Below the pieces are notes generated by a model. That model worked only from the letters and a program-made list of their open reading frames with translations. It did not search any database and had not been told where the DNA came from. The translations under genes were made by a program, and so were the position numbers. A stretch of DNA of 64,000 nucleotides from contig FLMG01001487.1 in the NCBI GenBank assembly GCA_900088475.1, positions 1 to 64,000 of the forward strand. The letters are read 5' to 3'. How positions within the stretch are numbered: position 1 is the first letter of the stretch; each line of letters begins with the position of its first letter. Origin of the DNA: Hyphochytrium catenoides (Eukaryota; Protista; Hyphochytriomycota). Below, in pieces: positions 12,587 through 63,400 of this stretch.

Positions 12587-15500
12587 ATGGCGGCCATGGA
12601 TTTTGCGAGTTTCGACGGCACGGCGTTGGAGGCCGCGACATATGATTCATCGAGTGAAAAGGATCCACTTACCGTCTACTCTGCCGTGGGAGAGAGGCTT
12701 AGCTCCAAGGCCAAGTCCAGACCACTCAGATCGCAAAGATCTGTCGCCGAGATATTGAAGGCGGCCAAGTCCTTCCGCGAGGATGGACACGGAGAGAAGC
12801 TATTATCCAATGCAGCAGGTGTTGAGGACGTGACCCTCACTCCTGAACTAGAGGATGCCATCTTCAACAGCGACTTCAGTGCAGCATCGCTGGAAGAGAT
12901 ACTGGAAAGCCTCGGCGGCCTTCAAGGGCTCGGAGAACTCGTTGCTAAAGTTGTCGAGGCTGTCCTGGGTGCCAAGTTGCCACCAATGACAGTAAGATAC
13001 TCTCACATGGGACTCAGAGCGACAATAGTCCATGGTGGTCAATCCTCTTCAGCGACACTGGGCTCTGTGGTGACTAATCTCTTCACAGGTGAGCCTCATC
13101 TATCTTTTCTCTGGTTCGTCCCGATGGGGTGAAAGCTGACGGCCGTCCAACTCCTCTTTCTTTCTTTGATCAAACGCAGGCTTCTGTCGGAAGAAAGAAC
13201 GTAGCAGTGTCGACATTATTAAGGACTGCACGGGCTACATCAAGCCAGCTTCGCTGACGCTAGTGCTCGGAAGACCGGGAAGCGGCAAGAGCTCTTTTCT
13301 CAAGCTACTGAGTGCGCAGTTGAAAGCTAAGAAGGGGATGGAGATTCTGGGCCATATTGACTATAATGGAGCCAATATTTCTGATATAGGGCCTAGTTTC
13401 CGATCATCGGTCCGCTACGTTACCCAGGTGAGAAGCTGCTGTCTGGTTACCTTTGCTCTCTTTCCTTAGCCATATCAGCTAGACTAATAACCACCCCTTG
13501 CTAGCGGGATATCCATGCCCCAACCCTAACTGTCAGCGAGACCTTTACATTTGCTCACTATTGTCTCAACGGCAAGAAGTTGAACAATGTCAAGGGTGTT
13601 GAGAGCTATCAACCGGCGCTTAAGGTAAAAACATGCCCAATATATCTTTCGATAGCTCAAGCTGTGGACTTATCAACCTCAAATTCGGACCACGACTTCT
13701 CACTCCACCTCAAACTAGGGAGAACGTAGACAGAAGGCTATCGAGTTGCTTGACGTCCTTCTGCAGAAACGACCTCAAATGATGCTAAAAGTTCTGGGGC
13801 TCGAGAAGTGCAAGGATACGATTGTGGGCAACGCCATGCTCCGCGGAGTCAGCGGTGGGGAACGCAAAAGAGTGACAACGGGAGAAGTCCTCGTCGGCAG
13901 GAACAGGGCCCTGTTTATGGACGAAATCAGTACCGGATTAGATTCCGCGGCCACCTTCGACATTGTCAAATCTCTCAAAGGTGCAGCACAGCAGTTTGGT
14001 GTCACCTTCGTTATCGCTCTCTTGCAGCCTCCTCCAGAGGTTTTCGAGCTGTTTGACGAAGTAATACTTCTCCACGAGGGTCATGTTGCCTATCATGGGC
14101 CGACCAGCACTGTCGTCCCCTACTTTGCGTCCATTGGCTATGCACCCCCTCCCCACAAAGACGTTGCAGACTTTCTTGTTGAGGTATTCTCTCCGACGGC
14201 TGTGCATTTTGTTACGCCTGAGTTCAGGGACAAGAGACTCCAGTTGCCTCGGAGTGGGGAGGAATTTGCTGCATTGTGGCAGGACTCTGCGCAGTTCAAA
14301 GAAATGGAAGAGTTTGTTGAAGCGCAATGGGTTGGAGAAAGCCCTGAATGGCTCACTAGTCAGAAGGAGTTTGAAATGGGATGGTGGGACAATTTTCTGG
14401 TGGTCTTGGCACGGCAGATGAAGCTGACAATCAGAAACAAGGTGTTCATATTCATGCGGATATTCATGGTCCTCTTTGGCGGCATCCTCTACGGAACAGT
14501 CTTCAGGGATGCAGATAAAGCTCAACCAAATATTATCATCGGTGCGCTGTTCGCGTCTTTGATGTTTGTCTCTATGGGCCAAGCCTCTCAAATTGCAACG
14601 TTCACCGAGATGCGGGGTGTGTTCTACAAGCAGAGAGCAATGAATATGATGCGCTCTTCGAACTACGTCTTCTCTGTGAGCCTTGCACAAGTGCCTTTTT
14701 CGTTCTTGGAGGCGTTAGTCTTTGGAAATATTCTCTATTGGCTGGTGGGACTAGCTGCAACATGGTACAACTATCTCTTCTTCATGCTGCTGCTGACCCT
14801 GACGAACCTGGCCTTCACTCAATATTTCTTCTTTATCTCGTGCCTCATGCCCAACCTTACGTCCATGCAGCCCGTGACGTTTGTCTCCATTCTTCTCTTT
14901 GTCCTTTTCGCTGGGTTCACAATTACCAAGACCCTTATCCCTGACGGTTGGATATGGATGTACTATATCTCTCCTGTGCAATGGGGTATCACTTCTCTTG
15001 CCCTGAACGAGTACAAAACGGACGCTTTGCAGACCTGCGTCTACAACGACAGAGACTATTGTGCGCTTTTCAACCAGAAGGCAGGAGACTTCTTCTTGCA
15101 GGTGCTGGGTTTCCCTACTGACTATTACCTGCAATGGGTGGGAGTACTCTACTTGGCTGGGTTCTTTGTGCTGTTCAGCATTTTTGCATCCGTTCTCCTG
15201 GAGAAAGTCCAGCACGCCGAGCCTGTGTCGCTCTCCAAGCCAGAGGATGACAAAGAACCAGTTCTCAAACCCAATGCCTCTGCGACTTCTTTTCACGAGA
15301 GAATGGAATCGATTCAGCAGCTAACAGAAAGCACTAGACCCAAGAGTGTAGCTTTCCAGCCAGCGATCTTGGCGTTTAGAGACCTTTGGTACACGGTAAA
15401 GGTTCCAGCGGGAAAGAACAAGACAGAAGAGTTAGATCTTCTAAAGGGCATCTCTGGGTACATGCTTCCTGGGACAATGACAGCTCTTATGGGCTCAAGT

Positions 15501-17388
15501 GGGGCAGGAAAGACTACGTTGATGGACGTGATTGCTTATAGGAAAAACACGGGAACTGTCAAGGGCGATATACTAATCAACGGGCATCCTGCAGACAACC
15601 TCACCATCCGGCGGACGACAGGCTATTGTGAGCAGATGGACATCCACTCTCCAACCACGACTGTGAGGGAGGCCCTACTTTTCAGTGCGAGACTCAGGCA
15701 GGACGCTGAGGTCTCAAATACTGCGAAGCAGCACGCAGTAGACGAGGCTATAGACCTTTTGGAACTCGAGGATATTGCAGATTTGATCGTAGGAGGCCTG
15801 TCCATTGAGCAACAGAAGCGGCTTACTATTGGTGTGGAACTCGTGGCCAATCCGTCCATTATCTTCTTAGACGAGCCGACTTCTGGACTAGACGCACGCG
15901 CTGCTAAAATTATCATGAGAGGCGTTCGAAAAATTGCAAACTCCGGTCGGACAATCATCTGTACTATCCATCAACCCAGTTCGGATGTCTTCCTCCTCTT
16001 CGATAATCTCCTGTTGCTAAAGAGAGGAGGAGAGACAGTATATTTTGGTGAGATTGGAGAGAATGGGAGGAAGTTGGTAAGCCATCTCGAAGGGATTCCT
16101 GGCACTCCCGCCATGCGCCCTGGCTACAATCCTGCCACTTACATGCTTGAAGTCATTGGCGCCGGTGTAGGCAGAGCGCAGGTGACGGATTACGCTGCGG
16201 CTTGGCGCAGCAGCCTTCCAGCTTCTTTACTTGAGGAGGAGCTCCAGCAGGAAGGAGTAGGGCTGCCCTCTACAAGGGTGGAAGCTATCAAGTATGCACG
16301 CAAGAGAGCAGCGGCGCCTGGCACACAGGTTGCGGAGATATTCCTCCGGTTTTTCCGCATGCACTGGCGCAGTCCCCACTACAACTTCGCACGTCTGGCC
16401 TTCTCTATCTTTCTGGCGATTGTCTTCCTTTCTGTCTACCGTGGGACGGACTATGGAACATATCAAGGCGCACTCTCTGGTGTCGGTATGATTTTTCTCA
16501 GTGTGCTCTTCGTGGCCATGACGATGTTCAATAGCGTCCAGCCAGTAATCTACGAGGAGAGAGCAGCCTACTACAGGGAGCGAGCAGCGCAAACCTACAA
16601 CGCTCTATGGTGGTGGATAGCCATCTTCACGACAGAGATCCCATATATCTTTGGCGTTAACCTGGTATATTGCGCGATTTTCTTCCCGTCAGTCGGCTTC
16701 ACTGGAGTTGAGAACTTCTTCATGTACTGGTTCGTTCACTCCCTCTACTGCTGGGTAATGGTCTCCTTCGCGCAACTGCTAATTGGGTTGTTGCCCAACG
16801 TGGCCTTCGCCGCTGTCTTTGGAGCGCTATATAGCATCATCCTGAACCTCTTTGCGGGCTTCAACCCGCCTACGGGTGACATCCCTTCCTATTGGCGGTG
16901 GTTCACAACCATAGTTCCTTCAAGCTACGGACTCTCAGGACTGCTGTCAGTTACCTTAGCGTACTGTTCAGGACAGGGAGGGTCGGAGCCTGGCTGTCAG
17001 CTGATATGTGATGAATCCATGGTTCAGAGCAACGCATGCAGTGCCCCCGCTTTGGAGATTGACGGAAAGATGACTTACGTATATACTCTAGAGCAACTCA
17101 TGGACATCTCGTATGATGTGACCTATGATGACAGGTAGGCCCATAACTGCGTTGACTGTAATGCTGCTTTGTCTATTCTCTTAAACTTACAAGTGTAAAG
17201 AGTGGCTTTGATTCACCTCCTCTACTCTTGCTCTCGGAGCTTAGTTGCTATCCGTTACTTCAACTCTGTGCTAACTGTCTTCCGTTTGCTCCAGGTGGAC
17301 CTACATCGCTGGTCTCCTAGTGATCCTAGCCATCTATGGAGTCTTATCGGTCGCCAGCTTTAGGTTCATTAACTGGACTGTCAGATAG
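12587..17388 (+). CDS. Full-size ABCG / pleiotropic drug resistance (PDR) transporter
   Basis: NBD1 GRPGSGKS, VSGGERKRV, FMDEISTGLD; TMD1; NBD2 GSSGAGKTT, LSIEQQKRL, FLDEPTSGLD, TIHQPS; TMD2. Exons 12587-13088, 13180-13427, 13505-13624, 13719-17134 and 17295-17388. Confidence 0.96.
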
Positions 17389-25268: not shown

Positions 25269-27735
25269 CTACAACTCTTCCTTCTCATTGCTATCCGCCT
25301 CCGACTTGTCTAGATCAGTTGCATCCTCATCCCCATCCTTCTTATCCTCATCCTCGTCCTCCTTCTCCTCCTCAGGAGGCACCTCAATTTCAGGCTCCAA
25401 GTCTAGAGAGTCCAGCTGGAGCTGACTCTTCAGCAGCCGATACATGCGGTGAGAGAACTCCTCTGTGTCATCTAGTGTAAAGCCCGAGTTAGCCAAGGCG
25501 GTGTCGTGAAGGAGCCAAGCTAGGTCCGTCGTGGCCTCACTCTCAGGATCTGATACCACCAGATCCTTCAGTTTGGATACAATTGGATGGCGAGGATTGA
25601 TCTCCATAATCTTCTTAGACGCCATCATCTTGGCCCTGCTGGGGTCGGCAAAGGCCTGGGCACGCATAATCCGCTCCATATTTGCAGTGTAGCCGTACTG
25701 GGAGGTCACCAGAACTGCAGGGGAGTTCTGGATACGCTGGGAAATGACAACGCGCTCTACCTTGTCCTTGAAGAGCTTCTTCAGGAACTCAGTTAGAGGC
25801 TTGAAGTTCTGCTTGTAGAGAGTTTCCCTCTTCTCTGTCACTTTCTCATCTTCATCCCCAAACTTTAGCCCTTCCTTAGTAACTGCCTGCAGGCGTTTCC
25901 CGTCGTACTCTGCGAGGTGCTGGGCAGCGTACTCATCCACTGGGTCCACGAGGTAAAGGACCTCGAGGTCCTTGGCCTTGAGTCTTTCCAGGAAAGGAGA
26001 GTCCTTGACTGCATCGACACTCTCTCCAGAGATGAAGTAAATCTCCTTCTGCCAGTCCTTCATGCGCTCAACGTAGGTGTCAAGGCTGATATACTTGCCC
26101 TCGGACTTGTTGGTCATGAAGCGCAGCAGCTTGGCCAATTTCTGTCGGTTGGCGCTATCTTCAATGACTCCCATCTTAATATTCTTACCAAAGGCCTTCC
26201 AGAACTTTGAATAGTCATCCTCCTCGTCATCCTTGTCCTTTTCATCCTCCTCCTCTTCCTCAGAGTCCTCCTTCTTGCCTTTCTCTGCTAGCTTCCTCAG
26301 AAGCTCTAACGCCTTGCGCACAAGCTTTTTCCCCATGACCTTCAGGACCTTGTGCTGCTGCAATGTTTCTCGCGACACGTTCAGTGGGAGGTCATCCGAG
26401 TCTACTACACCCCGGAGGAAGTTCAGATAGCGCGGCAGGAGATCCTCGAACTCATCAGTGATCAGGACCTTCCGCACATAAAGCCGGACGGCTGCATGGC
26501 TCTGATAGTACTTGTCATAGAAGTCGTACGATGGAGTCTTGGGAATATAAAGGATTGACTTGAACTCAATCTCTCCCTCAGCCTTGAAATGGATCCAGGT
26601 GAGTGGGTCGTTATAGTCCTTAGATATTGCCTTGTAAAACTTGTGATATTCCTCATCTGTGATGTCCTCCTTCGGGCGGGTCCAGATGGCCTGGTTCTCA
26701 TTCACGCGCTCCCAATCCCAAACCGTCTTCGTTTCTGTCTTCTTTTCTTCGGCCTTCTTTTTATCCTTCTTGTCTTCGTCGTCCGAAGTCTCCAGCTCAT
26801 CGTCCGTCTCCTCTTCATCGTCGGTTTCCTCTTCGTCGTCATCGGCGTCGCTCTCGTCGCTGTCAACCTCAACCGTCTCCGTCTTGCTGGTGTGCAGGTA
26901 GATGGGGAACGTAATGAACTCGCTGTAGTGAGAGACAAGTTGCTTCAGCCTTTCCTGATCCAAGAACTCGCTGGCGTCTTCCTTGAGAAACAGGGTGATC
27001 TCTGTACCTCGGCCCAGTGTGTTTCCACGAGGGTCCTTGGCAACGCTGAAGGACTCTCCTGCCGTGGACTCCCAAATGTGCTGGTCATCCTCAGGGTGCT
27101 TAGATACCACGCGGACACGGTCAGCTACGAGGTAGACTGAGTAGAAGCCGACACCGAACTGGCCAATCAGGCTAAGGTCTCCGCTTTTCTCGCTCAGAGC
27201 TTCGACGAAGTTAGTTGTCCCTGACTTGGCCACAGTTCCCAGGTTGGCAACCAGATCTGCCTTGGTCATACCAACCCCTGTGTCACGGATGGTTAGGGTC
27301 CTTGCTTCTTTGTCAGCGGAGATGCGAATCTCTAGATCTTTCTTGTCTCCAAGTAGCTTGTCGTCCGACAAGCTCAAGAAGCGGATCTTGTCCAGCGCAT
27401 CGGAAGCATTGGAAATGAGCTCTCTGAGGAAAATCTCCTTGGCTTTGTAGAGAGAGTTAATGATGATGTCCATTAGACGGTGGACCTCTGCCTGAAACTC
27501 ATACTTCTCCTCGGTGCTCTTTAACTTCTGCATCTCCTGATCTGAAAACCCTTGGCTTGACATTGCGTCGGACTCATCTTTCGCCGTGGTATAAACTAGA
27601 ACAAAGAATCGAAACAGCAAGGGTCAGTTAAAGAGGTGTTTTGACTCGCCGCAGCCGCCAATGTTTATTACCTGTTTGTGCGAAAAGACATCCGACAACT
27701 ATGCTCAGGAAGAGGAGCTTCCGTGCGTGCCTCAT
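25269..27735 (-). CDS. HSP90B1: Endoplasmin / GRP94, ER-luminal Hsp90
   Basis: Signal-peptide exon 27735-27672 ([21 protein letters not shown]), one intron, then [43 protein letters not shown] and [14 protein letters not shown]; C-terminal KEEL. Confidence 0.96.
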
Positions 27736-45593: not shown

Positions 45594-51584
<5,991 letters not shown>

Positions 51585-51886: not shown

Positions 51887-54800
51887 CTAGCTAATCTCGA
51901 ACAGCCCATTGGTCTCTAGGTCTCTAATCTTCTCATAGTCTGCTATCACCGTCGCTTCCTCCTCATGAATGATCCGTACACTTCCTGGCCGGGTGAAGCA
52001 ATCTGCATCAAGGTAGAATTATTACCGTGAGATAGAAGCACAATGATCAAGAACGGAAAGAGTTATGTTAGTAGAAAAGAACACGTGCGAGCGGGACAGC
52101 GGAGAAATGAATAAATTTGGAAGAGCGGGACAGCAAACCTATTGTCTTCTTTATAGGGCCGCCAACTTGTACATGCATTTGCATAACCCGGAACGAGGGC
52201 AAAGCTCTTATCGCGTCAACCTGGATATCCTTAAGGATGCCTTCCACCTGAAAAATAAGCGTTGAGAAAGTATCCTTCGTGTCTGGACTAGACTCGAGAA
52301 GTGCCATACCTGAGAGACAAGCATCACTTCTCTACCAACCTTTTTCAGGTTTCCATATTCCCGTGGCAGGCTCTCAAATTCCTTCTTGTCCACAAACGCA
52401 TCCACCGTGGCGGAAACCTGAATCATGAAAGGGAGGGGGGAACGATGTTGTTGATCAGATCAGCAATGATGACATGCGCAGGCCACGATGAGTGGTAAGA
52501 TAAGTGGATCCCTGTGGCAGAGCAACTACGGCAGGCATTGCAGCATTGCAACACAAGATCCAAATTCAAGGACGAGCAGTAGGAGGACCAGACGACGAAT
52601 GCACAAGGAAATTACCTGAGAATAGCCGATTGACTCTTCAGCGATAATAAGCCAAGTCCCCTCCCCTCCGTGACAGCGGCTGCCAATTTCCACGAGGCAA
52701 GGACCAGTAGGTGTCATCTTGATCTCTGCGTGTCCAGGACCGTGCTGTAGGAGGAACATAGAGACCAAGGATCAATGACGGGTGTCGTCTCCTCCTCGTA
52801 CAACCGTTCTACATCGCCTTTGTACTTCTGTGTCTTATCATCCCCTAACATGCAGCCATTACGTATCATACTCTGAACCTCTCGAACCTCCCAATTTTGA
52901 GGTCTTCCAGCATACTTGCCTTAATGCCAAGCGCATCTAACACCTTGAAGTCATACTCGATGAGCTCTTGAGCTACTGGAGAACTGGAAGGTAGGAGTTT
53001 CATGCCAAAGTAGACAAAATTCGCGCCGTTGATGGGCCTCTTGTCATATTCCCAAACGGCACAGACCTTGTGGTTGCCATCCCTGCTAACTGTATCCACC
53101 ACATATTCGATACCGCTAAGGTACTCTTGCACCAGGACGGCATTGTTGATATTTCCAAGGCCTACATTGCCGGGACATGAGCAGACTAGACAAACAGTCC
53201 ACTAAGCTTAGACGAGCGAAATGGCAAACAGTTGGAGCTCCGGCGTTGAGCTGGCGCCTTTAGGTCTTGGAGTTGCGTCAAAGGTCAGAATCGACCAGAG
53301 GAAGTAGTAGGTATCTGAAACAAACTTCCCAAAATCTTAAACGGCACAGTCTAGCTAGAGATGACCAAACGTTACCATTCTTTTTGCCAAGGACTTTCTT
53401 CACTGCCTCTATGACTGCCTGGACTGATGGACAAAGGAACACATCATCGCTGCCTGCGGATTCTATAGGCTTCACGATAAGAGGAGATGGCAACGTAGAC
53501 GTCCTTTGTTCGAGAAACTTAGCGGCGTCTTCTGCAAGGAACTCTTTAAGGAAGACCTCTACTTGGCCCAGCTCCGCAACTTTCTTCTGTGCCACAGCTC
53601 TGACCCCTGCCGAGCGTACCTGGGATGATAGGTTGTGAGTTCGTGTTGATCGTTAGTGTCTCCTCGGATCCTGGAAGGGACTATTGTGAGGCAGAGTGGC
53701 TTTGAACTTCGAAAAGTGGGAGCGAATCAGGAAGCTTGATGATAAAGAGAGACATGTCCTTAGTGCGCACCTTCTCCCCCATTTCAAACTTGTTTCTCCG
53801 GGCTTCGGATCCCTTGGTGCCGTTGGTAAGCACTCCCATCAGTTCTGAGAGCTGATCAGCCAGCAAGACCCCCGTCTCTGCGCCGGGCACAACCGCTTTG
53901 ATTGAGTACGGCAACTTCTGTAACTCTCTCTTGATGTTATGCACAGAGTAGTCTAGAGAAGGATCATGGCCTAGTGTGGCAGCGAACTGCAACTGCAGCC
54001 CCTCAGGAATAAGCGATGTCAGAGCAGCAATGGCCTCCAGCTTGTCACTGTAAACGCAAATGACGTCATAGCCCTTCATAGAGAATTGTTTGGCTAACAA
54101 CGCGCCGGTGCTGAAGGGATCCACTACCACGACCGCTGGGGCGGGCTCTACAGGTTTCTGGCACTCAACAACAAATAGAGTCCCTTCGTCCTCCTCCAGC
54201 TTCCGGATCTTCTCGTAATCGCGCTTGATGGCCTCCTCCTGCAGACATAGGACATGTCAATGCATATAACCACCACGCCATATCTCCTGCTCTCCTACTT
54301 GGCTTATCCGCCTTAACCAAAGCATGTCTTGTATTTCGGGCGGTTCCTATTAGTGTCTTACCTCAGCGTGCACGAGCCGCACTGCTCCCGGCCTCGTGAA
54401 GCAGTCTATGGTTTTCTTTAGCTGACAACCCACATTAAGCCCGATTTCAATAGCCACAAAGGAAGGCAATGCTTTGATGATCTCCACTCCAGGTATGGCT
54501 CTGATAATACCATCCTGTCGAGAAACAAGATGAACCTCTCGGCCGTACTTTTTCAACGGGCCATATTCGAAAGGCAGCTTCTCAAATGCTCTAGGATCAA
54601 GGTATGCGTCCACCGTGGCGGAGACCTGGGACGGAGTACACAGTGCAAGGTAAGCAATAAGCAAGAGTTCCCTTATCAGTGGACTGTCAGGACCGCACCC
54701 AAGGAGAAGGTCCCTATCTCACCTGTGACCTCCCAATGCAGGCATCCACGATTGTCAGCCACGTGCCCTCCCCTCCGTGGCAGCGGGATCCAATCTCCAC

Positions 54801-56508
54801 CAGGCATGGACCCGTCCGCGTCATCTTGATTTCGGCGTGTCCGGGACCATTCTGTAAAGCGTAAGACAGCATGGATCAGTTAAAAGCGCCCATACAGCTT
54901 GTGAGGAAGCTACAGAGCTCCCCGAGATACCTCAGCTACGAGCCACGAGCCACTGCATTTGCTAAAATTAAAGCGAAAAGACAGAGGACAAAGTGCAACA
55001 AAGCTGGCAGATGTTCAGGAGATAGTGCCATTCGCCCGTCGCTCATGGCTTTTCGCTTCCCTTAACGGATAGCAGCACATCGAACCCAAATGATGGCAGA
55101 GGAGATAATCAGTATCGGCCCAACCTTGATATTCAAAGCGTCAAGGACTTTGTGCTGATAGTTGATCAACTCCTTCGCGACGGGATCAGTGGTAGGCAGA
55201 AGCTCCATTCCGAAGTAAACAAAAGGAGAGCCATTGACTGGCCTTTTGTCGTACTGCCAGACGCCAAACGTTTTATGGACACCTTCTAAACTGACGGAGT
55301 CCACCACGTACTCCGGTCCCTCCAAGTACTCCTGTAAGAGTACGGCGTTGTTGACGGTACCCAGACCATTGACCTAGAACGAGCAAAGCTTGAGCTATGT
55401 ACCCGAAAATGCGTTGACATATTCCTGAACCCTAAACGCACCTTTCCCATGATGTTACCAAACGCAGCTCGCACTTCGTCAATCGTGTGGCAGAGCGTCA
55501 CGTCGTCACTGCCAGCGGACTCTAGCGGTTTGACGATAACTTTGAAAGGATCTGGCTTGTACAGATCTACATATTTCAGCACCTCTCCCCAAGTCGTGAC
55601 CTTCATTTGTTGCACGGCCCTCAGGCCAGCAGAGCGAACCTAGGAATACACTGATTAGACGACGATTGCGCCATAACAAAGAACAAACCCATGACGGTTG
55701 AAGTACCTTTTCCCCCATCAGGTACTTGTTTCTACGACATTTGGAGTCTTGAGTGCCGTTCGTTCGTAGGCCTAATTTCTCGGATAGGACGTCAGAAAGC
55801 TCAACACCGGTTTCTGCGCCAGGAATGACAGCAGTCACAGGCCAGGGTAGGGACTTGATATCAGCAATAGCAATATCAATCGCCTGTGGAGCTGCCAGGT
55901 TTACCGAGAGCACGGCTGCATACTCTAAGTCACAGTCCTTTTGGACGTACTTCTTCAAATCTTCGTTATCACTGCTCCAGATGCAAACCACGCGATAGCC
56001 ACGCTTGAATATCTGTTGAGCAAGGATTGCCCCTGTCGAGAAGGGGTCAACCACGATAACAGCGTCCCCGTGGTCCTGAGCATAAGCTGTTGATAGCCGT
56101 TTCTCCGGTTTGTAAGGCCCTGCCTCTGGTGCGGAGTTGAAATATCTGATGAGGGCAAGAGCATTGTTAGTGGCAGACTTCTACCGGTACCTTGGGCAAT
56201 CGAGGACTTAACCTTCTGAAGAGAACGTCCTCGACATAGAACTTTTGGTACGTTTTGCTCGTGTCTTGGCGTGAGTCGAAGGTTATGGCCCGCTTGGACT
56301 TGTTCAATCGCTGGAAGTTGCCATCTTCAGCTGGGAACACCTCAAACACGGCATCCCTTGCCACTCGACGGTCGTCAAAGGTAATAGCTTTCGTCATTTT
56401 TGGTGGTCTCTCATAAGCTCCCAAGCGGTACTTTGAGTCACGTCCACTGTCAACATTGCCGCCACGCGGGCTAAAGGCTTGCTTGCCGTTGGCCTGGCTA
56501 TTCCCCAT
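51887..56508 (-). CDS. Tandem two-module ATP-grasp ligase (L-amino-acid ligase / DdaF-NikS-like), about 996 aa, 13 coding exons
   Basis: Exons 56508-56213, 56145-55707, 55639-55442, 55373-55125, 54851-54723, 54625-54362, 54238-53771, 53619-53376, 53161-52920, 52744-52616, 52417-52310, 52247-52139 and 52002-51887 sum to 2991 nt in one frame. Each half has VVDPFSTGA, PGAETGV, RRNK, IVKPxESAGSDDV, QEYLxGxEYVVD, GPGHAEIK, LVEIGSRCHGGEG and KTIDCFTRPG. Confidence 0.9.
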
Positions 56509-57980: not shown

Positions 57981-59186
57981 TCATAACTGGCTCTCACTCT
58001 TGCGCTTCTTGGACCGAGATGACTCTTCATCTTCCACAGGTTGCATCTTTGCCGTTTCTTGGGCATCGGGAAGTGCCTCTGGTGCCTTGTCTCCTACATT
58101 GTCATCCCCATTCTGGATGCCAGAGTTTGCATTTGACTTGGCACCATCTTTGGCATTTGTTTGATTCAGACTGGGGGCTTCACTATTTATCCTAGCCTCT
58201 GTCCAGAAGGACTCTTAGCCTCACCATTTGGCATCTTTTGCCGCTAAATAAACTTACCGAGAGCTAGCTTTCTTGGGCCCACGATCTGACTATTTGGCTT
58301 GCGGATCTTGTACCCAAAGACACGGGGAACATAGATGTTGCTGTCCAAAGGGGGCTCGAACTCTGGAAATGTCAAGAAGAAAAGGTGTGCAAAGGTTGTT
58401 CCGATGTAGGCTCCATCTTGCTCTGCATGAGAGACCATAAGATCATGTAAGCGCAGAGGACAAGAGTAGCCAGGACGTGTAATCCTACGGTTCTCATCTC
58501 TGGTGTGATACATGTCTTGACACTTCGGGCAGAATAAGTAGAGCCAGTCCTTGTGCAACTCGTCCGTTCGACCCGCCTAGCAAGGGGACAAGTAAGCTTC
58601 CTACCCTATAATGGGTGAGTGCTAGTTCGCTTACCGGGACTACAGGTTGACCACGGCATAGCACTCTAGGACAGGTGCCAAACTCTCGGTTTACATACTT
58701 CTTTAGCTGCGGTTGAGCATAAGAACCCGACAAAAATCACATGCACCATCGGGATAAGCAGGGCCGTGACATACCATAGTTTCCAAGCCTCTTGAGGTGA
58801 CAATAAACCGTGCATGGATAAGCCCATACAGATCCATCGCCTGCTGCGATAGTTCGCTCTCGTCATCGCTCTCAGCTGTGTACATGAGAAGGAGTGTGAA
58901 CAATTACGCATCGCAGGGAAGGTCGATAAGAGAAGTAAGCCCAACCATCGCGATCTAGTATAATGTTCAGAGCTTCGGCATAGTTTGGGATAACTTGACG
59001 GAGGCCATAAAGATTGAAGTTGTCTTCGATGTAGCTGCGGTCCACATGGCAGAGCTTATTTCCCCTACATTTTTACGTCATGAGTACCCTACTGAACTAC
59101 AGCGAACAGGAAGCAGGAGTATGATCGCACTTTAGGCTGCAAAACCAGCTAATCCATGTATCGTCCTCGACCGAAGACTCGGACAT
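57981..59186 (-). CDS. CSNK2B: Casein kinase II regulatory (beta) subunit
   Basis: WISWFCSLKGN, YIEDNFNLYGL, LYGLIHARFI, zinc ribbon CPRVLC...CPKC, DGAYIGTTF and YVPRVFGYKI. Seven exons; alternative in-frame ATG at 59195. Confidence 0.94.
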
Positions 59187-60410: not shown

Positions 60411-63400
60411 TCAAAATAATAGGGAGTCAGAACTTCGTCGACGGAGCCAACTCCTATTCACACCGAATGGTGTGAATGGAGCAGGAGTGGGAGGATCTTC
60501 CGCTCCGTTACCCCTGGGGTTGGTTGTAGAAAGAGAGTTTGAGGAGTGGGTTCGCTCTACGTCACTCAGCTCTGACGAAGCTTGTAAACTAACCGCATCC
60601 TTAGGGTCCCCGAGGTTTGATCCGGTTTGGCCCTTGTTCTGGTCTTGCCCACTTGCAAATTGGTAGAGGCTTGCCACCCTTCGAAAAGTCCTCTCTTCTT
60701 GCTCTTTGATGTGTTGGGAGATCATCCGCACCATTGCCTCTTTCCACCTCGCAATCACCTTGGTGCCTTCCTCCCGTCCTTTCTCTGTTAGCTCTGGAAA
60801 GTGACTCCAGTCTAAGAGCTTGTACTCCTGAACATGGGGCTGTATGTAGATGAGGTTGTATGACATTTTTGCCTCTTCAATCAGCTCTCTCAGCTTCTGA
60901 TTGTTGGTCAGAAAGGTAAGTCCGAGGAGAACATCAGGCAAGAAGGGCATGCTGCTGTCGTCTTCGCCCAATCCTAGATAGCCTAAGAGTGCCTGCCACA
61001 GCAACCAGCCTCCAGAGACGTGACTGTCATACATCGGTAGACCGAGGAAGATGTTCTGCTTATTTTCCACATCCACGGCGATGACAATGCCCGGGGCGAG
61101 ATCCGAGCTCACCAGTACATCCACAGGAAGGTTGTTAACGTATCCTCCGTCAACCAATGTGTCACCTTCAACACGCACAGGGGGTACTAACCCTGCCACT
61201 GACATTGAAGCGCGGACGTACTTCCAGAGAGGACCTATCCGGGGAGCGGATACAAGCGCAAGAGAGGGAGTTAAGGCAGGCGCAGGTGAAGGTGCCAGGT
61301 GAAGGATTGTCAGGAAGCCAAATTTGCCGTGGTCATTTCGTCGCGCTATGGTGCGGTTAGAATGAAGTCACGGAGAAAATAGGTACGAGGTGAAGCAAGG
61401 CGACCCAAAGCTCAAACAATAAAAACAATACAGAACTAGCCCAAACTAATCAAGGAACAATGCAAAGGAGGGAAGAACTGGGACCAGCGCAAGAGTGACT
61501 TGCGATTTGTTCATCTTTACCGGTCTGGTGGATTTGCTCTTTTGAATGGGTGACATTGGTGGTGACACAGAAAAAAGGAATCCAGAGATCTTCGACCTGT
61601 ACATCCCCAAAGACTTCTTTAAGCAGGAGATCCATTCCCTGCCCGGAAAAGTACGAGAGGATAGGGAACGTGATATCTGCCAGAGAATTGATTGGGTCGC
61701 CCATGTTTCGACAGAAGTGTTCCAACAGGGGATGCAGGGTGGTCGTACACAACGTCATAGCATAGAGGGCTGCAATCATTGAACCCTTGAAGTTGGGTCG
61801 AAATGGGAGCACGTGTTAGCATCTCTTAGTCTCTCCTCGATCGCATGAGATAAAACACGTGGGCTAGATCTAACAGAGGCTCTCAGAAGGATTTTTGGGT
61901 TAATAGAGGTTCTCTAACAGAAGGATTCACGGTTAGAGTAGCGGCCAGCAGCAGGAGGCCTCTCTAGATGGGTGGAGAAAAGAAGCTTAATTTACTAGAC
62001 CATCTTATCATAGATGCTTATATACCTGAGAGGTTCCGCCGATAACGTCAACAGGTACAGAATGAGACTCCAGAGCTTGCAGCACCCCAAAATGTGCTAG
62101 GCCTCGTGCTCCACCTCCTCCTAAAACTAGTCCCACGCTATGACCTGAGAGATGGCGGGCCAACCTGACCAATATAGCAATGGTGAGCGCGGGAGAGCAC
62201 CCAGTCTTCGCGGCAAAAAAAATACGGATGAGAAAGCGCAACTTGTCGCCATGCAGCCATTCTAGGAACCAGGAGACAGAAATAGCGGGAGTGGAAGTCG
62301 CGATATACTTGAAAGTAAACATTTGCTCAGCTTTGCCCAATAAGCCAACCTTTCTAGGTCCATCTTTACATGGTCTATGGTCAACCGGAGGTGGTGATGC
62401 TGCCTGATCTTTCTCTCAACGAACCATTCGCGAGTGTGGCTCGGCAGCTCCGGCATGCCGTAATGGAGCAGCACTAGCTCCTTTAGGGCATAGGATCGCC
62501 GTGAATGGTAGGAAGGTGAAAAGAGATAGCTCTCGATGGGACTGAGATAAATGGTTGCAAGGGGACATGTACCACATCAGGCCGGCGTCATCAGAGCATG
62601 CTATCTCTAGGATGGAGCTTGCTTCAAAATGAGGGAATCAAATAGGAATGGCTAAAAAACGAGCACTTAGGGCATCCCAACTACCACACTAAGCACCACA
62701 AGGGACAGCAAGGCATAGGTATAGTACCTGAGCACTGGATCTGCCCCTCCATCTCCAACAAGAAGAATGCAGTCTGCCATTCTAATGCAATATTTTGTCC
62801 ACTGATATCGAGAGGAAAGGTATGAGTTGGCGTTTTTCGCACACAGAGAGAATGGTAAAGATAGGGCCGCGAGTAAGGATAGTGGAATGCAAGGGCGTAG
62901 TGCACACGCCAGTGCTTCGGGGAGTTATGAGATGTTGGCAGCCGTAACAAAGCCAGCTGTTAAGAAGAAGGGTATGACTAATACACAGAAGTCTAAATCA
63001 CAAGGCAGGTATGGGATTGGGAATTGTTTCACCTCTGAAAGAAAGGAGTCTGCCTGGTACACGACGAATCGATACTTCTCTTCAAGGTCGGTGAGCCAGC
63101 TAATAATCCTTTGCTTAGAAAAGAGTGATGGAGTCGAATGGCTTGCACTTTCCCCGAGTGCTCGCTCTACCGTTTCGCTGTCAAGGTAGAACGTGGGGCC
63201 ACTTAATCCTAGCGCCGGGAGAAGCCTAAGAGTTGAGAGTTATGCTTAGAGGTGGGCAGTCCGCTGTACATGGTAGAGACGGGTGGAGAAGGTAGAGACG
63301 GGTAGAGAAGTTACAGACAACCAGGATATCGCCCTAGTTGTCAGGCCGGTGATAATTTGGAGAGGCTAAGTGTTCCCACTCTGCTCATCACTTCTCTCAA

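What the first reader, a model, noticed from the sequence alone, without database searches (positions are those of the whole stretch)
51887..56508. Eukaryotic double ATP-grasp ligase: candidate stand-alone two-step non-ribosomal peptide synthetase
Seen: one spliced ORF of about 996 aa holds two complete ATP-grasp modules joined by a short linker (...EGTLFVVECQKPVEPAPAVVVVDPFSTG...). Both keep the ATP/Mg-binding and catalytic motifs (KPxESAGS, QEYL, HxE, ExGxR-xxGG). Established: this motif set typifies the L-amino-acid ligase clade (BacD, DdaF, NikS), which forms amide bonds in bacterial peptide natural products, and the separate ligases DdaG and DdaF act sequentially in dapdiamide synthesis. 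Animal carnosine synthase also has two ATP-grasp regions. Inference: two apparently intact modules in one chain could build a tripeptide or oligopeptide metabolite (osmolyte, metal chelator, signal or defence compound) in a protist. The N-terminal subdomains differ (IWSSDNEDLKKYV vs VYSDKLEAIAALTSLI) while KTIDCFTRPG is invariant, consistent with different acyl donors and a similar amine acceptor. The neighbours are housekeeping genes, so this is not a visible biosynthetic cluster.
Basis: partly seen in the sequence, partly recalled or inferred. Interest (0 to 1): 0.75.

Follow-up and report, generated by a model that had tools for sequence, protein, structure and literature searches.

The report
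Tandem double amino-acid ligase gene
This is a real 13-exon gene of a stramenopile protist encoding two complete, apparently active amino-acid-ligase (ATP-grasp) enzymes fused head to tail; it belongs to a large family shared by oomycetes, diatoms, brown and golden algae, for which I found no named or published product.

Summary
A minus-strand gene (51887-56508; 13 exons, 12 introns, 996 codons) encodes a roughly 127-residue N-terminal extension, ligase module 1, a 9-residue linker and ligase module 2. The end of module 1, the linker and the start of module 2 lie in one exon with no stop and no Met. The modules are 55% identical, and both keep the ATP-, Mg- and acyl-phosphate-binding residues.

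Each module matches NCBIfam PRK07206 collinearly. The closest solved structure is a bacterial 'L-amino acid ligase'. DdaF, BacD, PurD and CPS membership fail.

The architecture is not unique. At least 242 double-module proteins exist, in all sampled oomycetes (including P. infestans PITG_20994), chrysophytes, brown algae, pelagophytes, diatoms, a ciliate and a dinoflagellate. None has an informative name, and no paper was found.

New here:
- A myristoylation-like MGN start and two R/K-x-x-T-F motifs are shared with oomycetes.
- N and C modules pair by lineage, not by position.

The product is unknown. Earlier notes of this scan report similar tandem ATP-grasp genes on other pieces of this genome.

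The parts
51887..56508 (-). Whole coding region: 13 exons, 996 codons plus TAG. Exons, high to low: 56508-56213, 56145-55707, 55639-55442, 55373-55125, 54851-54723, 54625-54362, 54238-53771, 53619-53376, 53161-52920, 52744-52616, 52417-52310, 52247-52139, 52002-51887.
   Evidence: Sequence read. A script check found 2991 nt, no internal stop, and 11 GT-AG introns plus 1 GC-AG intron. Every junction restores a motif conserved in relatives.
56061..56508 (-). N-terminal extension (aa 1-127, includes intron 1 at 56212-56146). It starts MGNSQA (myristoylation-like). It carries two R/K-x-x-T-F motifs, KAITFD (56391-56374) and RAITFD (56292-56275), followed by DVLFRR|YFN across intron 1.
   Evidence: No Pfam match. 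MGN starts occur in 39 of 114 double-module relatives, all the named ones oomycetes. The same two RA[IVAT]TFD[EP]R motifs and DV[LM]xRR[YFH]FN occur in Phytophthora, Aphanomyces, Saprolegnia, Pythium and Lagenidium. The equivalent region of relative P0165 is predicted disordered (pLDDT below 50, residues 1-103).
54161..56060 (-). Ligase module 1 (aa 128-551; exons 2-7a).
   Evidence: The exons match NCBIfam NF005543 collinearly: profile positions 4-114, 117-181, 183-264, 265-297 and 307-392, summing to about 277 bits. There is an LAL_C2 hint in exon 6. Exon 4 matches PDB 30vh 'L-amino acid ligase' at 1e-13.
54134..54160 (-). Inter-module linker QKPVEPAPA, preceded by ...LFVVEC. It lies inside exon 7.
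   Evidence: Continuous frame in a single exon. A Cys followed by a Pro-rich stretch of similar length sits at the same junction in chrysophyte, brown-alga, pelagophyte and bolidophyte relatives, but not at the C-terminus of second modules.
51890..54133 (-). Ligase module 2 (aa 561-996; exons 7b-13).
   Evidence: NF005543 positions 4-114, 132-183, 185-264 and 265-303 are matched by exons 7-10. It is 55% identical to module 1 along its whole length.
55499..55531 (-). Module 1 ATP-phosphate-binding strand and loop, KPLESAGSDDV.
   Evidence: The Lys is present in 114/114 first and 112/114 second modules of relatives.
53440..53472 (-). Module 2 equivalent, KPIESAGSDDV.
55230..55259 (-). Module 1 omega-loop motif WQYDKRPVNG (putative carboxylate-donor pocket).
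   Evidence: In relative P0165 the same motif aligns to RhiM/RizA (4wd3) residues 218-227, within the 218-232 stretch that holds pocket residues L224 and Q232 (roles from PMC13579937). W, Y, D, K and R are near-invariant in both modules of 114 proteins. No bacterial or archaeal species genome carried this motif together with a confirmed relative.
53025..53054 (-). Module 2 omega-loop motif WEYDKRPING.
   Evidence: Same evidence as for module 1.
54765..54839 (-). Module 1 catalytic core HAEIKMTRTGPCLVEIGSRCHGGEG: the two Mg-binding Glu (54833-54831 and 54797-54795) and the catalytic Arg (54785-54783).
   Evidence: The Glu-Glu spacing of 12 and Arg at +4 compare with RhiC E258/E271/R275, which has spacing 13. 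H, E, E and R are each kept in at least 112 of 114 first and second modules of relatives.
52658..52732 (-). Module 2 catalytic core HAEIKMTPTGPCLVEIGSRCHGGEG.
54386..54418 (-). Module 1 KKTIDCFTRPG (LAL_C2 subdomain; putative C-loop).
   Evidence: Pfam LAL_C2 4.2e-5 on exon 6. In P0165 the Asp lies 98 residues after the second Mg-Glu, against +95 for RhiM D376. This mapping rests on spacing only.
51983..52151 (-). Module 2 KKTI-D|CFTRPG, split by intron 12 (52138-52003).

Best explanation
The gene encodes one cytosolic polypeptide with three parts: a disordered N-terminal extension and two tandem L-amino-acid-ligase-type ATP-grasp modules, both catalytically competent. The extension is probably N-myristoylated and carries two conserved basophilic-kinase-type R/K-x-x-T-F sites.

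Each module should bind ATP-Mg, phosphorylate a carboxylate substrate to an acyl-phosphate, and pass the acyl group to an amine to form an amide bond. This mechanism is inferred from the family.

The two loops that form the carboxylate-donor pocket in solved ligases are conserved in both modules and across the family. The A domain, on the nucleophile side, is the most diverged region. The most likely reading is therefore that both sites activate the same or a very similar acid and attach it to different amines. This could be two nucleophiles, or a first product that is extended again, giving a small di- or tri-component amide metabolite. The product is unknown.

Shown: the gene model, the fusion, intact catalytic residues, family placement and wide conservation. 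Inferred: enzyme activity, a shared donor with different acceptors, and lipid anchoring and phospho-regulation.
For: - Gene model and in-exon fusion.
- Family placement: both modules are collinear with NF005543. Modules of relatives score 318-337 bits against the 302-bit cut-off.
- Solved structures: the nearest is an L-amino acid ligase (1e-13 for one exon; 1e-51 to 4e-53 for modules of relatives). In the fold search the best single-module matches are BL00235, BacD and RizA, with TM 0.73-0.81.
- Catalytic residues: Lys, Glu, His-x-Glu and Glu-x-Gly-x-Arg are each kept in at least 112 of 114 first and second modules.
- Donor pocket: the omega-loop motif aligns to the RhiM omega-loop, which together with the C-loop forms the donor pocket (PMC13579937).
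- Regional identity M1 vs M2: A 48%, B 56%, C1 72%, C2 56%.
- Fused form in relatives: transcript-derived ORFs (MMETSP Euplotes, Ochromonas, Paraphysomonas, Pseudo-nitzschia, Aureoumbra) and intronless genes in P. infestans and a marine MAG.
- AF2 model of relative P0165: pLDDT 87.7, pTM 0.85, two folded modules and a disordered N-terminus.
- N-terminal motifs shared with oomycetes.
Against: - No activity, product or transcript data exist for this gene.
- No alignment column separates first from second modules across lineages, so different acceptor specificity is not a conserved family trait.
- The C-loop mapping rests on spacing only.
- The window protein itself could not be scored or folded as a whole. 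It was searched exon by exon, and the fold is that of a relative about 45-55% identical.
- The myristoylation and phosphorylation motifs are sequence patterns only.
Confidence: 0.55

Rival explanations
1. Covalent pseudo-homodimer. Stand-alone ligases of this type are homodimers. Here the two halves are simply a dimer written in one chain, and both sites do the same reaction, possibly iteratively to give a homo-oligomer as in RizB-type enzymes. The fusion fixes stoichiometry and stability.
For: - RhiM is a dimer in crystal and solution.
- pTM 0.85 for a 1007-aa relative suggests a fixed inter-module packing.
- N and C modules pair by lineage, and no position-specific residues exist.
- 95 columns are conserved with the same residue in both modules, including both pocket loops.
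Against: - The modules are only 45-60% identical within each protein, and the A and C2 regions stay diverged even where the B region is 84-89% identical (Triparma, Nitzschia). This hints at selection to keep the halves different.
- I could not inspect model coordinates, so the dimer-like packing is not shown.
Confidence: 0.27
2. One reading: an assembly line in which the two modules activate different acyl donors and share a similar amine acceptor, building a tripeptide or oligopeptide.
For: - There are two intact sites in one chain.
- Precedents exist for sequential separate ligases: RhiM then RhiC, and DdaG/DdaF (my knowledge).
- The A domains differ.
Against: In RhiM/RhiC the donor pocket is built by the omega- and C-loops, not by the A domain. 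Those loops are the parts conserved between the modules.
Confidence: 0.1
3. A peptide- or protein-modifying ligase: the amine or carboxylate partner is a peptide or protein terminus or side chain (as with PGM1 or RimK-type enzymes) rather than a free small molecule.
For: - The N-terminal lipid-anchor and kinase-site motifs suggest a regulated, localised enzyme.
- The family has no known metabolite.
- ATP-grasp enzymes of neighbouring clades do modify peptides (my knowledge).
Against: The closest solved and curated relatives are free-amino-acid ligases. No partner gene is conserved next to it.
Confidence: 0.06
4. Gene-model artefact or primary-metabolism enzyme: either two adjacent genes wrongly joined, or a PurD, biotin-carboxylase or CPS-type enzyme.
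For: Public records mislabel relatives as 'biotin carboxylase' or 'argininosuccinate lyase 2'. CPS aligns over both modules in Foldseek.
Against: - The fusion lies inside one exon with no stop or Met.
- Relatives are fused in transcripts and in intronless genes.
- PurD scores 25-36 bits against a cut-off of 288.
- The CPS superposition has TM 0.28 and rmsd 26 A.
Confidence: 0.02

Closest known systems
Bacterial 'L-amino acid ligase', 419 aa, solved structure listed by the tool as PDB 30vh/30vq
   Same: It is by far the nearest solved protein: 1e-13 for exon 4 alone and 1e-51 to 4e-53 end to end for single modules of relatives. Domain order, catalytic H-x-E / E-x-x-x-R and the K-T-x-D-x-F-x-x-P-G region are the same.
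   Different: It is single-module with no N-terminal extension. Its omega-loop reads W-R-A-D-K-L-P-A-P-D-G instead of W-E-Y-D-K-R-x-x-N-G. I could not find which organism or pathway it comes from: no paper was found, and the entry is not in the Foldseek copy.
NCBIfam NF005543 (PRK07206), a bacterial ATP-grasp subfamily named 'hypothetical protein'
   Same: Each module is collinear with the whole 416-position profile. Modules of relatives exceed the curated cut-off: 318-337 bits against 302.
   Different: The bacterial family is single-module and itself has no assigned function. The eukaryotic proteins carry two copies plus an N-terminal extension.
Uncharacterised double-module proteins of oomycetes and ochrophytes (e.g. 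P. infestans PITG_20994, Saprolegnia SDRG_04930, and Aphanomyces, Triparma, Undaria, Nitzschia and Skeletonema proteins)
   Same: They have the same architecture: extension, module, short linker, module. Oomycetes share the MGN start and the RAxTFD motifs. Identity is 40-60% per exon.
   Different: The P. infestans and marine-MAG genes are intronless, whereas this gene has 12 introns. No close orthologue is in the databases: at most about 60% identity. In the tree this protein's two modules are each other's nearest relatives.
RhiM (RizA) and RhiC, BacD/YwfE, BL00235, DdaF: characterised stand-alone L-amino-acid ligases
   Same: The fold matches (TM 0.73-0.81 per module), as do the acyl-phosphate chemistry residues and the omega-loop position. 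RhiM then RhiC, and DdaG then DdaF, are precedents for two ligations in series.
   Different: Sequence relationship is distant (E 1e-7 to 1e-12). DdaF scores 164-189 bits against a cut-off of 840, and BacD about 33 against 850. Those enzymes are separate proteins encoded in bacterial clusters.
Carbamoyl-phosphate synthetase large subunit
   Same: It is the classic case of two duplicated ATP-grasp modules in one chain, each active and carrying out successive steps. It gives the only full-length alignments in the fold search.
   Different: The relative arrangement of modules differs (TM 0.28, rmsd about 26 A) and identity is 11-14%. There are no oligomerisation or allosteric domains and no amidotransferase partner. 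The resemblance is analogous, not orthologous.

Membership tests
ATP-grasp superfamily | Nucleotide-binding Lys, hinge Glu-x-Leu, two Mg-binding acidic residues and a catalytic Arg in the C-terminal domain | tested here: met
   KP(L/I)ESAGS, QEYL, HAE, VEIGSR are present in both modules. They are conserved in at least 112 of 114 first and second modules of relatives.
L-amino-acid ligase clade (Pfam ATP-grasp_4 + LAL_C2) | ATP-grasp_4 core followed by the LAL_C2 subdomain, at Pfam gathering scores | tested here: inconclusive
   Window exons alone give ATP-grasp_4 13 bits and LAL_C2 24.2 bits, below the cut-offs of 27 and 29.4 because the domains are split by introns. Full-length relatives pass both, for example P0006 with ATP-grasp_4 95.7 and LAL_C2 55.9. 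The joined window protein was not submitted.
NCBIfam NF005543 (PRK07206 subfamily) | Whole-protein score of at least 302 bits, collinear over the 416-position profile | tested here: inconclusive
   Module 1 exons cover positions 4-392 in order and sum to about 277 bits; module 2 exons 7-10 cover 4-303. Modules of relatives score 318-337 bits. The window modules could only be scored piecewise.
DdaF (dapdiamide A synthase) equivalog NF041595 | Score of at least 840 bits | tested here: not met
   24.8-38.7 bits per exon; 164-189 bits for whole modules of relatives.
BacD (alanine-anticapsin ligase) equivalog NF053745 | Score of at least 850 bits | tested here: not met
   27-34 bits for modules of relatives. 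PDB BacD E 3e-8 to 5e-7.
PurD / biotin carboxylase / CPS (primary metabolism ATP-grasp) | Curated family score; for CPS, the two-module fold arrangement | tested here: not met
   purD 25-36 bits against 288. CPS-like NF009402/NF009403 score 14-27 bits. CPS superposition has TM 0.28 and rmsd about 26 A.
L-amino-acid ligase (functional definition) | ATP-dependent formation of an alpha-peptide bond between two unprotected L-amino acids with ADP + Pi release | not testable with these tools
   No biochemical data exist. No paper on any double-module member was found.
Carnosine synthase (CARNS1) | Orthology to animal ATPGD1; beta-alanine + histidine ligation | not tested
No animal protein appeared among the listed hits.
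N-myristoylated proteins | Met-Gly start with a small residue at position 6 and no Pro at 7; lipid shown by labelling | tested here: inconclusive
   The MGNSQAN start fits the pattern as I know it. MGN is conserved in all named oomycete relatives. Modification itself is not testable here.

The most novel reading that the evidence does not exclude
The family is a conserved stramenopile (and partly alveolate) two-site ligase that is membrane-tethered and kinase-regulated. It makes a still-unknown small amide metabolite by adding the same acid twice, for example bis-acylation of a diamine or polyamine, or stepwise extension. Its two halves have been kept alike by repeated intragenic gene conversion for hundreds of millions of years. 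It is absent from plants and animals but present in every sampled oomycete pathogen, so it would mark an undiscovered piece of stramenopile metabolism.
Probability: 0.3. Interest if true: 0.75.

Novelty: new variant of a known kind. Interest (0 to 1): 0.55.

Why it matters
L-amino-acid ligases are known as single bacterial enzymes of antibiotic and toxin pathways. This gene shows that a tandem-fused form, with both sites intact, is a standard part of the gene set of a major eukaryotic group: oomycete crop and fish pathogens, diatoms, kelps and golden algae. No product, phenotype or paper could be found for it.

The study turns a single odd gene into a defined family with testable features:
- two active sites with conserved donor-pocket loops;
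- a likely lipid anchor and two kinase-type sites;
- an unusual evolutionary pattern in which the two halves track each other within each lineage.

Finding the product would add a metabolite, or a modification, to stramenopile biology. It would also give enzymologists a natural two-site ligase for peptide synthesis.

Tried and rejected
There is no transcript check of this gene.
- Bacterial relatives and their gene clusters: the genome-contig scan with module alignment A2 used the pattern W[EQ]Y[DN]K[RKV]xxN[GD] and confirmed nothing.
- Identity of PDB 30vh/30vq: it is not RhiM/RhiC and was not identified in the TabS-related papers. The code itself found no relevant paper.
- Literature on tandem, double or fused ATP-grasp, or on ATP-grasp in oomycetes: nothing relevant.
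- Conserved neighbours: the loci of P0165 and P. infestans share no neighbour with the window.
- Old N-versus-C split hidden in sub-regions: region trees lower the label changes only to 12-14. For the A+C2 columns, a tree with the window's two modules as sisters is not rejected (p-AU 0.50). A mosaic history is therefore not shown for this gene.
- Recent gene conversion in the window gene: rejected. Third codon positions are near saturation (37% identity), and paired introns are no more alike than shuffles.
- Position-specific residues: none at the 60%/20% thresholds.
- Joined spliced protein: it was never sent to any search, family, look-up or fold tool. Those ran exon by exon by reference, or on database relatives. 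Inside run_python I concatenated the exons from /data only for local work: module-versus-module comparison, a local profile to delimit modules, alignments and trees.


Full report
**Gene model.** Three-frame translation of the minus strand and the sequence itself give a 13-exon gene.
- Start and stop: ATG at 56508, TAG at 51889-51887.
- A script check found 2991 coding nucleotides, no internal stop, and 12 introns of 62-273 nt. Eleven are GT-AG and one is GC-AG with a gcaagt donor (intron 9).
- Every junction rebuilds a motif conserved in relatives that are intronless or come from transcriptomes (consensus lines). Examples are DVLFRR|YFN, GEK|VRSAG, GK|VNGLG, NIK|NGPGH, SQ|VSATVD, HAE|EEA and TI-D|CFTRPG.
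- The end of module 1, the nine-residue linker and the start of module 2 lie in one exon (54238-53771) without a stop or a Met. The two-module chain therefore does not depend on any splice prediction.

**How the searches were run.** Those were run exon by exon by reference, or on database relatives. Inside run_python I concatenated the exons for local computations only: module comparison, a local profile, alignments and trees.

**The two modules.**
- Module 1 (aa 128-551) and module 2 (aa 561-996) are 55% identical over 431 positions.
- Three introns sit at identical positions and phase in both modules: after GEK, after (N/G)IK and after SQ. A fourth is shifted by seven nucleotides. Module 2 has two extra introns, and module 1 has one that module 2 lacks.
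- Third codon positions are nearly saturated, and paired introns are no more alike than shuffled sequence. The copies are therefore old.

**Family placement.**
- Exon by exon, both modules match NCBIfam NF005543 (PRK07206, 'hypothetical protein') collinearly, with DdaF a distant second.
- Whole modules of relatives pass the curated NF005543 cut-off (318-337 bits against 302). They fail those of DdaF, BacD and PurD by wide margins.
- The only solved structure hit by a single exon is a 419-residue bacterial 'L-amino acid ligase', listed as 30vh/30vq (1e-13). Modules of relatives match it end to end at 1e-51 to 4e-53. BL00235, RizA and BacD follow at 1e-7 to 1e-12.
- Placement in the L-amino-acid-ligase clade is therefore supported. 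Identity with any characterised ligase is not.

**Distribution.**
- A search of 1.84 billion representatives with exon 4 gave 1456 hits. The best 18 all have two matched stretches in chains of 579-1180 aa.
- A profile search found at least 242 double-module proteins.
- The named ones come from every sampled oomycete genus, including P. infestans PITG_20994. Others come from chrysophytes, Triparma, brown algae, pelagophytes and diatoms, plus a ciliate and a dinoflagellate.
- Several are transcriptome ORFs, and the P. infestans and marine-MAG genes are intronless. The fused mRNA is therefore real in relatives.
- The nearest single-module relatives whose source is named are also eukaryotic.
- Public names are uninformative or wrong: 'biotin carboxylase', 'argininosuccinate lyase 2', 'dapdiamide A synthase'.
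- I found no paper on the family.
- The window's organism is a stramenopile without a close sequenced relative. Its Grp94-type HSP90 is 66% identical to metagenomic proteins and 60-63% to oomycete proteins. No ligase relative exceeds about 60% identity.

**Are both sites active?** In 114 double-module proteins the phosphate-binding Lys, the hinge Glu, His-x-Glu and Glu-x-Gly-x-Arg are each kept in at least 112 first and second modules. The window's modules have all of them. Neither half looks like a pseudoenzyme.

**Substrate sites.**
- In RhiM/RhiC the omega- and C-loops build the pocket for the amino acid that is phosphorylated. The amine partner binds on the A-domain side (PMC13579937).
- The family-specific motif W-x-Y-D-K-R-x-x-N-G aligns to RhiM residues 218-227, within the stretch that holds pocket residues L224 and Q232.
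- By spacing, T-I-D-C-F-T-R-P-G lies where the C-loop is.
- Both motifs are conserved in both modules across the family. The A domain is the most diverged part of the window protein: A 48%, B 56%, C1 72%, C2 56% identity.
- The likeliest reading is therefore the same or a similar acid donor in both sites, with differing nucleophiles.
- A caution applies. No alignment column distinguishes first from second modules across 22 lineage representatives, so a fixed division of labour is not a family trait. A covalent pseudo-dimer doing one reaction remains a serious rival.

**Fold.** AlphaFold2 on relative P0165 with 94 sequences gives pLDDT 87.7 and pTM 0.85, with two folded modules and a disordered N-terminal region of about 118 residues. 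Foldseek's best single-module matches are the ligases BL00235, BacD and RizA (TM 0.73-0.81). CPS aligns over both modules but with a different arrangement (TM 0.28, rmsd about 26 A).

**N-terminal extension.**
- The protein starts MGNSQA. MGN starts are found in 39 of 114 relatives, and all the named ones are oomycetes.
- Two motifs, KAITFD and RAITFD, match RA[IVAT]TFD[EP]R pairs in oomycetes. Ochrophytes carry related R/K-x-x-S/T-F sites.
- DVLFRRYFN is also shared.
- These look like a myristoylation signal and basophilic-kinase sites. That is inference from sequence patterns.

**Evolution of the halves.**
- In a 251-row tree the window's modules are sisters, and in lineage after lineage the first and second modules are sister groups.
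- With a site-heterogeneous model on 46 rows, the position label needs 16 changes, as many as random labels. A tree with all first modules together is rejected (delta lnL 1377, p-AU 1.4e-7).
- Identity between halves varies sharply along some proteins, for example Triparma: A 55, B 89, C1 69, C2 46%.
- A Cys/Pro-rich linker of similar length is shared by several ochrophyte classes and resembles the window's.
- Together this favours one old fusion followed by concerted evolution. Repeated internal duplication is not excluded. For the window gene, the A+C2 columns do not reject sisterhood.

**Context.** The neighbours are a Prp22-type helicase, a GH63 glucosidase, a CK2-beta-like gene (identified by eye) and a patatin-like lipase. 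There is no cluster. Earlier notes of this scan list other tandem ATP-grasp genes elsewhere in this genome. I did not examine them.

**Verdict.** This is a genuine gene with a correctly described architecture. It is a member of a widespread eukaryotic variant of L-amino-acid ligases for which I found no informative name and no paper. The function remains inferred.

Noticed in passing
window 56508-56061 (-): The N-terminal extension carries a myristoylation-like MGN start, two R/K-x-x-T-F motifs (KAITFD at 56391-56374, RAITFD at 56292-56275) and DVLFRR|YFN. All are shared with oomycete relatives, and ochrophytes have related R/K-x-x-S/T-F sites. This suggests membrane anchoring and kinase control of the enzyme.
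   Followed up: partly
window 51890-56060 (-) and proteins P0004-P0288: First and second modules are sister groups within each lineage instead of grouping by position. A clade of all first modules is rejected (p-AU 1.4e-7). Identity between halves is patchy along the chain in some species (B domain 84-89% against 46-60% elsewhere). This fits concerted evolution or repeated internal duplication.
   Followed up: partly
window 54134-54175 (-); relatives P0188, P0210, P0191, P0226, P0155, P0189, P0190, P0165: The inter-module junction has a conserved Cys followed by a Pro-rich stretch of similar length in several ochrophyte classes and in the window (VVEC-QKPVEPAPA). The motif is absent from the C-terminus of second modules, which argues for a single origin of the fusion.
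   Followed up: partly
window introns 55706-55640 / 53770-53620, 55124-54852 / 52919-52745, 54722-54626 / 52615-52418: Three intron positions are identical in phase and site in both modules, and a fourth is shifted by 7 nt. The P. infestans (L003) and marine-MAG (L001) genes have no introns at all. Intron 9 uses a GC donor (gcaagt).
   Followed up: partly
window 25269-27620 (-): There is an intronless 783-aa Grp94/endoplasmin-type HSP90 ORF. The best matches are 66% (metagenomic) and 60-63% (oomycetes). I used it only to place the organism among stramenopiles.
   Followed up: partly
window 13746-17138 (+): A 1130-aa open frame carries ABC2_membrane and ABC_tran domains: an ABCG-type transporter in one long exon.
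   Followed up: no
window 46021-51094 (+): An S1 domain (46021-46740) and an OB_NTP_bind domain (50810-51094) lie on the same strand. This is probably one Prp22/DHX8-type spliceosomal helicase gene ending about 800 nt from the ligase stop codon (convergent genes).
   Followed up: no
window 58247-58736 (-): Open frames containing LYLFCPKCQDMYH and FGTCPRVLCRGQPVVPV look like casein kinase 2 beta subunit. I recognised this by eye only.
   Followed up: no
window 60411-62340 (-): Patatin-like phospholipase exons (Pfam PF01734 on two ORFs).
   Followed up: no
public records of relatives (P0208, P0225, P0223, many JGI entries): Members of this family are labelled 'Argininosuccinate lyase 2', 'Dapdiamide A synthase' or 'biotin carboxylase' in public databases. 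None of these names is supported by the curated-model scores.
   Followed up: yes
same genome, other pieces (notes s1-345864, s1-367460, s1-338286, s1-350107): Earlier first-stage notes list another fused tandem ligase-type ATP-grasp gene, an intronless double ATP-grasp gene and further ATP-grasp genes in this genome. The family may be expanded here.
   Followed up: no
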